Assembly: GCF_006345805.1 (NCBI RefSeq)
Contig: NC_042999.1
Span: forward strand, 151,776,001-151,840,000
Length of the DNA: 64,000 nucleotides
Direction: 5' to 3'
DNA from: Octopus sinensis
Taxonomy: Eukaryota
Below the pieces are notes generated by a model that was not told where the DNA came from, ran no database searches, and saw only the letters and a list, made by a program, of their open reading frames with translations. Within the stretch, counting starts at the first letter, position 1. Every line of letters starts with the position of its first letter. Shown piece after piece: positions 2,922 through 3,443 of this stretch. A program made the translations under genes and the position numbers.

Positions 2922-3443
2922 CAAAATAAGAAAATGGAGAAATACATCGAAATCAAATATCAATTACCAGATAATACTCAATCACATACTTTATTAAACC
3001 CCTACATAAGAAACTATAAGGTTAAACATAATCATGCAGGGTAAAACAGTGTACATGAAGGAGTGTACATAAAATAGTAATGTTATACAATAAGTAGAAT
3101 ACATATAATAGAACATAAATATAAGTACACATAAATATAAATATAGACTATATCTTACAGCTGTTTCGGCCATGTAGATACATGTAGATACATGGCCGAA
3201 ACAGCTGTAAGATATAGTCTATATTTATATTTATGTGTACTTATATTTATGTTCTATTATATGTATTCTACTTATTGTATAACATTACTATTTTATGTAC
3301 ACTCCTTCATGTACACTGTTTTACCCTGCATAATTATGTTTAACCTTATAGTTTCTTATGTAGGGGTTTAATAAAGTATGTGATTGAGTATTATCTGGTA
3401 ATTGATATTTGATTTCGATGTATTTCTCCATTTTCTTATTTTG
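2922..3443. repeat. 522-bp near-perfect palindrome (255-bp inverted arms, 12-nt spacer)
   Basis: 2922-3176 is the reverse complement of 3189-3443 except C3033/A3332. The spacer 3177-3188 lies within the direct repeat catgtagata x2. Confidence 0.97.

What the first reader, a model, noticed from the sequence alone, without database searches (positions are those of the whole stretch)
2922..3443. 522-bp near-perfect palindrome (255-bp arms, single mismatch)
Seen directly: the arms are 254/255 identical with only a 12-nt spacer, while most neighbouring repeats look much more diverged. Long palindromes with short spacers are known to be unstable (cruciform extrusion, fold-back), so this one is either very young, maintained by arm-to-arm conversion, or an assembly fold-back artefact. 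If transcribed it would form a 255-bp dsRNA stem, a prime ADAR or Dicer substrate, and coleoids have extensive A-to-I editing (inference).
Basis: partly seen in the sequence, partly recalled or inferred. Interest (0 to 1): 0.78.

Follow-up and report, generated by a model that had tools for sequence, protein, structure and literature searches.

The report
Young AT-rich 522-bp DNA palindrome
A 522-bp almost perfect DNA palindrome really is present, right next to a long (TA)n tract in what is probably an octopus genome. It most likely arose recently when DNA replication folded back and copied about 250 bp in reverse, so it is a neat structural curiosity of a known kind rather than a demonstrated functional element.

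Summary
Arms 2922-3176 and 3189-3443 (255 bp each) match at 254/255 positions around a 12-nt centre. Nothing else in the 64 kb comes close. The arm is single-copy in the window and absent from every collection I could search. No target-site duplication flanks it, and the two flanks are unrelated. The centre is a perfect 10-bp tandem repeat (CATGTAGATA x2.4). The left edge lies 2 bp from a (TA)~64 tract (chance about 0.002). A simulated fold-back (template switch) at the central interrupted repeat CATGTA-N12-TACATG reproduces the sequence except for the one arm mismatch. My best reading (about 0.5) is a genuine, young, locally made inverted duplication triggered at a structure-prone microsatellite. 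It looks like a human PATRR but is only 73% AT and has a GC-richer, asymmetric centre, which should damp cruciform extrusion. Rivals are a palindromic MITE (about 0.2) and an assembly artefact (about 0.12). An octopod origin is plausible from Tc1 relatives in Octopus bimaculoides. The dsRNA/ADAR idea is physically sound but untested. The Dicer part is weakened by reports that molluscs lack an endo-siRNA pathway. Long near-perfect dsRNA-forming loci are already reported as unusually frequent in octopus. Interest is modest.

The parts
2922..3176 (.). Left arm of the palindrome (255 bp, 73% AT overall). The outer end starts CAAAATAAGAAAATGG.
   Evidence: The arm is single-copy in the window apart from microsatellite-like hits to arm positions 178-232.
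3177..3188 (.). Central 12-nt asymmetric core GATACATGTAGA. The inner 8 nt TACATGTA are self-complementary, and the two GA dinucleotides give the four mismatched bases.
   Evidence: mismatch list; 12-nt loop in the DNA fold; RNA fold pairs the inner TA/TA.
3189..3443 (.). Right arm (255 bp), the reverse complement of the left arm at 254/255 positions.
3171..3194 (+). Perfect 10-bp tandem repeat CATGTAGATA x2.4 sitting on the symmetry axis. It reads as the interrupted inverted repeat CATGTA-N12-TACATG and is the proposed fold-back (template-switch) site.
   Evidence: TRF: period 10, 2.4 copies, 100% matches; the motif is otherwise absent or rare in the window; simulation.
3033..3033 (.). Left-arm member (C) of the only mismatched pair within the arms.
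3332..3332 (.). Right-arm member (A, where G is expected) of the only mismatched pair within the arms. It is a transition and not in a CpG.
2795..2919 (.). (TA)~64 microsatellite, preceded by (TG)n, ending 2 bp before the palindrome. It is the proposed replication barrier or stall site linked to the palindrome's origin.
   Evidence: TRF: period 2, 64 copies; the probability that a randomly placed 522-bp segment abuts an AT-only tract within 2 bp is 0.0017.

Best explanation
This is a genuine and evolutionarily young inverted duplication made in place; it is not a mobile element and not a gene. Shown: a 249-bp reverse-complement copy of the adjacent sequence lies next to its source, and the two are joined through a 24-bp tandem repeat (CATGTAGATA x2.4) that contains the interrupted inverted repeat CATGTA-N12-TACATG. 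Inferred: a replication fork met the structure-prone (TA)~64 tract that abuts the locus. [quoted passage not shown] It copied about 250 nt backwards and returned to the original template. In version A the right arm is native and 2922-3170 is the new copy; the stall point and the fold-back point then coincide at the edge of the (TA)n tract. In version B the left arm is native, 3195-3443 is new, and the backward copying stopped at the (TA)n tract. One arm difference in 255 bp (0.39%; my Poisson 95% range is about 0.01-2.2%) compares with 12-32% divergence among neighbouring dispersed repeats, so the event is recent. The product resembles a human PATRR. Its asymmetric, relatively GC-rich centre should reduce cruciform extrusion, which would let it persist. 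Any role as a dsRNA (ADAR) substrate would be a by-product and depends on transcription, which is untested.
For: The palindrome is exact and unique in the window. The arm and the right flank 3444-3620 are single-copy in the window. No arm-derived sequence was found in the gene index, the word-indexed protein search or the exhaustive HMMER search (one spurious low-complexity hit). Arm 29- and 32-mers are absent from metagenome, viral and GTDB contigs. There is no target-site duplication: only 3-mer TAT matches at asymmetric offsets in AT-rich DNA. The centre is a perfect 10-bp tandem repeat. The 12-nt spacer therefore itself contains TACATG, a copy of the inner arm motif, which is not required by palindromy. 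Simulated fold-back at CATGTA-N12-TACATG reproduces the 801-bp region except for the one arm mismatch in both orientations, whereas a fold-back at the self-complementary 8-mer gives the wrong bases at 3187-3188. The left edge is 2 bp from a (TA)~64 tract, chance 0.0017. In the literature, inverted junctions form at pre-existing interrupted inverted repeats of 2-14 bp (PMC10766183). Repeats of 5-9 bp with 3-12 bp spacers suffice for snap-back (PMC7999016). Template switching creates perfect hairpins in a single event (PMC8794818).
Against: No outgroup or second individual could be examined, so the half-palindrome ancestral allele is only predicted. The inner arm ends of any palindrome with a spacer form an inverted repeat by construction, and 6-bp repeats with 3-12 nt spacers start once every 36 bp in this window. 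Only the tandem-repeat nature of the centre is therefore independent evidence, and a later 10-bp duplication at the centre of an older palindrome would produce the same thing. Documented short-range template-switch events are tens of bp (largest pattern 59 bp in PMC8794818), while snap-back at breaks usually gives chromosome-scale palindromes. A 250-bp interstitial event falls between these two documented size ranges. The searchable DNA collections hold essentially no cephalopod DNA, so the absence of other copies there is weak evidence. TA-rich tracts are also preferred insertion targets of some transposons, so the adjacency is not specific to this model.
Confidence: 0.5

Rival explanations
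1. It is a palindromic non-autonomous DNA transposon (a MITE or foldback-like element) that recently inserted into or next to the TA-rich microsatellite. Its whole length would consist of two long terminal inverted repeats.
For: The size (522 bp), AT-richness and full-length hairpin potential fit the general MITE picture. The window holds mariner and Tc1-like transposase remnants, so DNA transposons have been active in this genome. Abutting a (TA)n tract fits TA-targeting families. A palindromic Harbinger repeat accounts for the strong hyper-editing signal in frog, and octopus has an exceptionally high fraction of near-perfect dsRNA-forming loci (PMC5625713).
Against: There is no target-site duplication of 2 bp or more at symmetric termini, although arms this similar imply a recent event in which a duplication should be intact. 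There is a TA right after the right end, but on the left the TA is separated from the element by GT. The arm has no terminal-plus-internal direct repeats of the IR/DR type. The termini (CAAAATAAG...) do not match the canonical Tc1/mariner, hAT, piggyBac or Helitron ends I recall (from memory). No second copy exists in 64 kb or in any searchable collection.
Confidence: 0.2
2. It is an assembly or sequencing artefact: one arm is real, and the other was introduced by chimeric or fold-back molecules, mis-polishing or gap filling near a difficult microsatellite.
For: Fold-back molecules are a documented long-read artefact, at about 0.55-0.6% of ONT gDNA reads (PMC12870357). Whole-genome amplification produces artificial palindromes (PMC6218980, listed, abstract only). 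The locus abuts a (TA)64 tract, where reads and consensus are error-prone. Near-identity of the arms is what a copy of a single locus would give.
Against: A fold-back read mirrors everything after the turn, whereas here the sequence leaves the palindrome after exactly 261 bp into a unique right flank unrelated to the left flank. This would need two precise chimeric junctions carried into the consensus. The window has no N or gap. Artefact reads are a small minority and virtually absent in PacBio HiFi data. The arms differ at one position, and the centre carries an ordered tandem repeat rather than adapter-like or random junk.
Confidence: 0.12
3. It is an old palindrome whose arms are kept nearly identical by arm-to-arm gene conversion, as in sex-chromosome palindromes, so its apparent youth is misleading.
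For: 99.6% arm identity beside 68-88% identical neighbouring repeats is also what concerted evolution would give. Template switching between arms is reported to homogenise inverted repeats (PMC8604942 abstract; PMC8794818).
Against: Nothing positive supports it. It is not parsimonious for a 0.5-kb non-coding, AT-rich element with no sign of selection. Long persistence would also have to withstand deletion pressure on palindromes (PMC7999016).
Confidence: 0.08
4. It is a functional hairpin-RNA locus (a long hpRNA, ADAR substrate or decoy, or young miRNA precursor) maintained by selection for its RNA structure.
For: If transcribed, either strand folds into a stem of about 255 bp. Octopus shows the strongest hyper-editing signal among 19-22 metazoans surveyed, and predicted dsRNA regions are enriched for editing (PMC5625713). 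Template-switch events are a documented source of new miRNA hairpins (bioRxiv 10.1101/2023.04.19.537475, abstract).
Against: There is no evidence of transcription. There are no Rfam hits at gathering score. The permissive hits (MIR7993 at 65 bits against 100, mir-942, mir-3149) are symmetric on both strands and go to families that are themselves AT-rich perfect hairpins, so they reflect generic stem scoring. Molluscs including O. bimaculoides show no dedicated endo-siRNA pathway (PMC12479628). The arm has no homology to any protein-coding target.
Confidence: 0.05

Closest known systems
Human palindromic AT-rich repeats (PATRR11, PATRR22, PATRR17, PATRR8)
   Same: Both are several hundred bp long, nearly perfect non-coding palindromes, AT-rich, single-locus, and share no homology with other such loci. 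Both have strong hairpin or cruciform potential (PMC4940405; PMC1851657).
   Different: PATRR11 and PATRR22 are over 90% AT, have an AT-rich centre (1-3 G/C in the central 20 bp) and relatively GC-rich ends, and have no spacer. Here AT is 73.4%, the central 52 bp are the least AT-rich part (54% AT; 6 G/C in the central 20 bp), and there is a 12-nt asymmetric core with four mismatched bases. This is closest to the stable PATRR22-quasi allele. A role in translocations and size polymorphism cannot be tested here.
Template-switch mutations and inverted junctions at short interrupted inverted repeats (four-point TSM model; ODIRA; snap-back after breaks)
   Same: A reverse-complement copy of adjacent sequence is created next to its source. 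The junction lies at a short interrupted inverted repeat (6 bp with a 12-nt spacer), which is within the reported ranges (PMC10766183; PMC7999016; PMC8794818). The simulation reproduces the sequence.
   Different: Reported short-range template-switch events are tens of bp. ODIRA gives kb-scale inverted triplications that contain an origin. Snap-back at a break gives very large palindromic duplications. This case is an interstitial duplication with arms of about 250 bp and no triplication.
Palindromic MITEs (for example the palindromic Harbinger-derived repeat of Xenopus noted in PMC5625713)
   Same: Both are short, AT-rich, form a hairpin over their whole length, and would be dsRNA/ADAR substrates when transcribed.
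   Different: Those are multi-copy families with target-site duplications. Here no target-site duplication and no second copy were found.
Large sex-chromosome palindromes maintained by arm-to-arm gene conversion (established knowledge, not checked here)
   Same: Both show very high arm-to-arm identity beside diverged surrounding repeats.
   Different: Those have kb- to Mb-scale arms with kb-scale spacers and carry genes. Here the arms are 255 bp, the core is 12 nt and there are no genes.

Membership tests
PATRR-type palindromic AT-rich repeat | Several hundred bp in length | tested here: met
   522 bp, compared with about 190-600 bp for PATRR17, PATRR11 and PATRR22 (abstract).
PATRR-type palindromic AT-rich repeat | Nearly perfect palindrome without a spacer | tested here: inconclusive
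   254/255 in the arms. The centre has a 12-nt asymmetric core in which 8 nt are self-complementary, leaving four mismatched bases. This is comparable to the 'quasi' PATRR22 allele.
PATRR-type palindromic AT-rich repeat | Extreme AT-richness (over 90% for PATRR11 and PATRR22), with an AT-rich centre (1-3 G/C in the central 20 bp) and GC-richer ends | tested here: not met
   73.4% AT overall. The central 52 bp are 54% AT, there are 6 G/C in the central 20 bp, and the arms are 72-86% AT, so the gradient is the reverse of a PATRR (definitions).
PATRR-type palindromic AT-rich repeat | Size or symmetry polymorphism in the population, and breakage at the centre that mediates rearrangements | not testable with these tools
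   This needs population data or cytogenetics.
MITE / foldback-type non-autonomous DNA transposon | Terminal inverted repeats, small size (under about 800 bp), AT-rich | tested here: met
   Met trivially by any palindrome of this size, so it is not discriminating.
MITE / foldback-type non-autonomous DNA transposon | Target-site duplication flanking the termini | tested here: not met
   A scan of all offsets of +/-6 bp at both ends found only two 3-mer TAT matches at asymmetric offsets, which is about what chance gives in AT-rich DNA.
MITE / foldback-type non-autonomous DNA transposon | Multiple dispersed copies in the genome | tested here: inconclusive
   There is no second copy in the 64-kb window and none in the protein or DNA collections searched. 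The source genome itself could not be searched.
Template-switch / fold-back inverted duplication | The new sequence is the reverse complement of immediately adjacent sequence | tested here: met
   The simulated products of models A and B equal the observed sequence except at 3033 or 3332.
Template-switch / fold-back inverted duplication | The inversion junction lies at a pre-existing short interrupted inverted repeat (microhomology) | tested here: inconclusive
   CATGTA-N12-TACATG lies within a perfect 10-bp tandem repeat at the axis, which is consistent with the feature. That it pre-existed is inferred, and a later central 10-bp duplication would mimic it.
Template-switch / fold-back inverted duplication | An ancestral or alternative allele carries only one arm | not testable with these tools
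   No orthologous or allelic sequence is reachable. The predicted junctions are given.
Long-read fold-back artefact | The sequence after the turn mirrors the sequence before it (same locus, opposite strand) for the rest of the molecule | tested here: not met
   Complementarity stops at 2921/3444. The right flank 3444-3620 is unique and unrelated to the left flank. The definition comes from PMC12870357.
Long-read fold-back artefact | Supported only by a minority of reads or a single read | not testable with these tools
   No read data are available.
Rfam miRNA precursor families (MIR7993, mir-942, mir-3149) | Score at or above the family's gathering threshold | tested here: not met
   The best scores are 65.2, 54.9 and 43.8 bits against a gathering score of 100, and they occur on both strands alike. 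There are 0 hits at gathering score.

The most novel reading that the evidence does not exclude
The locus may be a cephalopod counterpart of a PATRR. On this reading it is a real, polymorphic, structure-forming palindrome generated at a (TA)n fork barrier and kept symmetric by arm-to-arm template switching or conversion. It would also be transcribed, so that its 255-bp perfect stem is a dedicated hyper-editing (ADAR) substrate or decoy in an animal that lacks an endo-siRNA pathway. It could then be one of a class of such de novo palindromes behind the unusually high dsRNA-forming potential reported for the octopus genome.
Probability: 0.06. Interest if true: 0.6.

Novelty: new member of a known kind. 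Interest (0 to 1): 0.3.

Why it matters
If real, this is a clean and very young example of an interstitial inverted duplication with about 250-bp arms, and both junctions are readable. The centre lies in a 10-bp tandem repeat and the outer edge lies at a (TA)64 tract. That size falls between the tens-of-bp template-switch mutations and the kb-to-Mb fold-back duplications that have been documented. Such loci could help explain why octopus genomes hold so many near-perfect dsRNA-forming sites, which are the raw material for ADAR hyper-editing. They also mark places where assemblies, PCR and cloning are prone to fail. On present evidence it is a single non-coding locus with no demonstrated function, so its value is as a mechanistic footprint and an assembly-quality checkpoint, not as a new biological system.

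Tried and rejected
1. I looked for independent copies or alleles. Exact look-ups of both 59-aa arm ORFs failed, and the word-indexed homology search found no candidates. The exhaustive HMMER search with the flank-plus-arm ORF gave one 25%-identity, eight-stretch hit, which I rejected as low-complexity. Exact 32-mer and 29-mer scans of metagenome, viral and GTDB contigs gave 0 hits.

2. I tried to identify the source. Exact look-ups of three larger window ORFs found nothing, and the mariner fragment found nothing. The Tc1-like pieces did find Octopus bimaculoides proteins at 60-65% identity and unlabelled ENA long-read assemblies. This gives lineage-level support only.

3. I rejected a Tc1-type IR/DR architecture, because the terminal motif is not repeated internally.

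4. I rejected a Helitron from memory of its ends: the termini are not TC...CTRR and the element does not sit between A and T.

5. I rejected a parvovirus or densovirus-type hairpin telomere and other viral termini, because there are no nearby ORFs beyond microsatellite translations and no Pfam signal.

6. I rejected head-to-head insertion of two SINE copies. The arm is unrelated to the window's dispersed repeats, has no tRNA-like part, and the join is exactly symmetric.

7. I rejected a direct fold-back at the self-complementary TACATGTA, because it predicts TC, not GA, at 3187-3188.

8. I rejected a coding origin for the arm, as would apply to an hpRNA made from a target gene, because there are no Pfam or homology hits.

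9. I did not use the sigma-70 promoter and terminator scan, because it is not meaningful for animal DNA.

Full report
**Observation.** The stretch 2922-3443 is a 522-bp palindrome with its axis between 3182 and 3183. Against its own reverse complement only three pairs fail: 3033C/3332A, 3177G/3188A and 3178A/3187G. The DNA-parameter fold returns exactly that 12-nt loop. The inner 8 nt of the spacer are self-complementary, so the repeat finder reports 261-nt arms with no gap. Complementarity stops dead at 2921/3444.

The structure is an extreme outlier. The next-best zero-spacer palindromes have arms of 46 bp or less and lie inside (TA)n tracts. All other long inverted pairs are 70-88% identical and hundreds to thousands of bp apart. 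Folding energies are about 47-50 standard deviations below shuffled controls. I also applied the published criterion for near-perfect dsRNA-forming loci: at least 40 bp, over 95% identity, reverse-oriented, within 2 kb. By that criterion this is the only non-microsatellite locus in the 64 kb.

**Context.** The window has no N, is 34% GC, and 12% of it is short-period tandem repeats. It has no tRNA, no Rfam hit at gathering score and no convincing genes. The long ORFs are translations of microsatellites. It carries a mariner remnant at 1441-2071 (PF01359, sub-threshold) and a Tc1/Tc3-like remnant with several frameshifts at about 25501-26504 on the minus strand (PF01498, E = 1.6e-9). It also carries dispersed SINE-like repeats that are 68-88% identical to each other.

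I searched the Tc1-like pieces with X at each break and nothing mended. The only named close relatives are two Octopus bimaculoides proteins at 60-65% identity. Other hits lie on long contigs of unlabelled ENA long-read assemblies. An octopod or cephalopod origin is therefore plausible, but the species is not established.

**Anatomy of the element.**
- The arm is 73% AT. Bins run at 72-86% AT, but the innermost 29 bp are only 55% AT, and the central 52 bp (ACAGCTGTTTCGGCC...GGCCGAAACAGCTGT) are 54% AT.
- The axis sits in a perfect 10-bp tandem repeat, CATGTAGATA x2.4, at 3171-3194. The motif TGTAGATACA occurs nowhere else in the window, and CATGTAGATA occurs once more, at 4143.
- This tandem reads as the interrupted inverted repeat CATGTA-N12-TACATG.
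- The left edge (2922) is 2 bp from the end of a (TA)~64 tract at 2795-2919. A randomly placed 522-bp segment abuts an AT-only tract that closely with probability 0.0017.
- The right flank 3444-3620 is unique in the window and unrelated to the left flank.
- There is no target-site duplication. Scanning all offsets of +/-6 bp gives only two 3-mer TAT matches at asymmetric positions, about what chance gives in AT-rich DNA.
- There are no IR/DR-type internal repeats of the terminus.
- The arm has no other copy in the window. The only hits are microsatellite-like matches to arm positions 178-232.

**Search for other copies or alleles.** Nothing was found. Both 59-aa arm ORFs are absent from the gene index. 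The word-indexed homology search produced no candidates. The exhaustive HMMER search with the ORF spanning the right flank and outer arm gave one spurious low-complexity hit. Arm 32-mers and 29-mers are absent from metagenome, viral and GTDB genome contigs. These collections hold little or no cephalopod DNA, although the protein collections do hold some cephalopod-like host contigs. The negative result is therefore weak.

**Mechanism.** I simulated two fold-back models.
- Model A: the right arm is native. A leftward fork stalls at the (TA)n tract, and the nascent 3' end ...CATGTA-N12-TACATG snaps back. It copies 249 nt and returns, so the inserted piece is 2922-3170.
- Model B: the left arm is native. 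The backward copy runs until the (TA)n tract, so the inserted piece is 3195-3443.

Each model reproduces the 801-bp region exactly except for the single arm mismatch. A fold-back at the self-complementary 8-mer TACATGTA predicts the wrong bases at 3187-3188.

This anatomy matches what the literature reports. Inversion junctions arise at pre-existing interrupted inverted repeats of 2-14 bp (PMC10766183). Snap-back can use repeats of 5-9 bp with 3-12 bp spacers (PMC7999016). Template switching can create perfect hairpins in one event (PMC8794818).

There is a caveat. The inner ends of the arms always form an inverted repeat around any spacer, and such short repeats start every 36 bp in this window. 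The independent evidence is therefore only that the spacer itself continues the 10-bp periodicity. It contains TACATG, roughly a 1-in-1,000 to 1-in-4,000 coincidence by my estimate. A later 10-bp duplication at the tip of an older palindrome would give the same picture.

The size is also unusual. Documented short template switches are tens of bp, and break-induced snap-backs are typically very large.

**Age.** The arms show one difference in 255 bp (0.39%; my Poisson 95% range is about 0.01-2.2%). Neighbouring dispersed repeats differ by 12-32%. Either the event is recent or the arms are homogenised. I cannot separate these two without orthologues, and I favour youth as the simpler reading.

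**Rivals.**
- A palindromic MITE is the main alternative. DNA transposons exist here, TA-rich targets are typical of some families, and a palindromic Harbinger repeat underlies the frog hyper-editing signal (PMC5625713). However, the defining target-site duplication was tested and not met, and no second copy was found.
- An assembly artefact cannot be excluded without reads. The documented fold-back artefact mirrors the rest of the read and is a minority, read-level event that is almost absent from HiFi data (PMC12870357). Here, two different unique flanks, the absence of gaps, one arm difference and an ordered centre all argue against it.
- A functional hairpin-RNA gene has no positive support. 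The permissive Rfam hits (best 65 bits against a threshold of 100) are symmetric on both strands and go to families that are themselves AT-rich perfect hairpins.

The stem is certain if the locus is transcribed. Hyper-editing of such structures is very prominent in O. bimaculoides, whose genome is reported to have an exceptionally high fraction of near-perfect dsRNA-forming loci, 4.4e-3 (PMC5625713). That measure also counts self-complementary (TA)n tracts. In this window 430 of the 956 qualifying bases are tandem repeats. The Dicer or siRNA branch is weakened, because molluscs including O. bimaculoides show no dedicated endo-siRNA pathway (PMC12479628). No transcription data were available.

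**Comparison with known systems.** Structurally the closest analogue is the human PATRR: several hundred bp, nearly perfect, AT-rich and single-locus (PMC4940405). This element fails the compositional definition. PATRRs are over 90% AT and have an AT-rich centre with 1-3 G/C in the central 20 bp. Here AT is 73%, the central 20 bp hold 6 G/C, and the centre is the least AT-rich part. Its asymmetric core with four mismatched bases resembles the PATRR22-quasi allele. That allele does not extrude a cruciform at physiological salt and is stable in wild-type E. coli (PMC1851657). Mechanistically it behaves like a large template-switch or fold-back duplication, and I file it there provisionally, pending the ancestral allele.

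**Verdict.** The most likely explanation is a genuine, young, locally generated inverted duplication at a microsatellite-associated fold-back site (about 0.5). The alternatives are a palindromic MITE (about 0.2), an artefact (about 0.12), an old element maintained by conversion (about 0.08) and a selected RNA hairpin (about 0.05). I rate it a new member of a known kind, with interest 0.3.

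Noticed in passing
window 25501-26504 (minus strand): A Tc1/Tc3-like transposase remnant broken by several frameshifts and stops (HTH_Tnp_Tc3_2, E = 1.6e-9, plus recognisable DDE-region pieces). Its closest named relatives are two uncharacterised Octopus bimaculoides proteins at 60-65% identity. Intact 340-aa relatives at about 50% identity exist in Logan and ENA assemblies.
   Followed up: partly
window 1441-2071 (plus strand): A degraded mariner-type transposase fragment (PF01359 at 22.3 bits, below the cut-off of 24) with a frameshift near 1780, about 850 bp upstream of the palindrome. 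The word-indexed search found no homologue.
   Followed up: partly
window 14-403, 16581-16930, 41263-41555, 44663-44847, 46956-47119: A dispersed SINE-like repeat family with copies 70-84% identical. Two copies form an inverted pair (44666-44839 and 46946-47119, 84% identical, 2.1 kb apart), which is the second-best inverted repeat in the window. A second dispersed family includes 2209-2373, 17678-17826, 16370-16429 and 56309-56362.
   Followed up: partly
window 5450-5733 and 8442-8668: Compound tetranucleotide arrays (TATC/TGTC/CATC)n on the plus strand, with a reverse-complement counterpart about 2.9 kb downstream (76-88% complementary over about 110-128 nt). Together they form a large, diverged inverted pair of microsatellite arrays.
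   Followed up: no
window 19141-19978: An AT-only tandem tract of about 840 bp, the longest of 18 such tracts of 60 bp or more. Together these tracts cover 5% of the window and are themselves self-complementary and structure-prone.
   Followed up: no
window 10259-10999 (minus strand): A long low-complexity tract that translates as poly-Thr/His/Pro/Ile/Asn runs in overlapping frames. It is probably trinucleotide-type simple repeats and not a gene.
   Followed up: no
window 3458-3473: A small hairpin motif, GGTAAAA-CA-TTTTACC (7-bp stem), 15 bp beyond the right end of the palindrome. It may be irrelevant, or it may relate to where the backward copying ended in model A.
   Followed up: no
window 3124-3241 and 2720-2880, 3615-3745: Sub-threshold Rfam matches to AT-rich or TG/TA-repeat-derived miRNA families (MIR7993, mir-942, mir-3149, mir-297, mir-466, mir-1277) at the palindrome centre and in the flanking microsatellites, on both strands. 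These families appear to score any AT-rich perfect hairpin.
   Followed up: yes
window 63693-63986 (minus strand): An ORF ending ...EDLPKLMEDRDFWYDLVKHISV resembles, from memory, the C-terminal tail of LINE/RTE-type reverse-transcriptase ORFs. It had no Pfam hit.
   Followed up: partly
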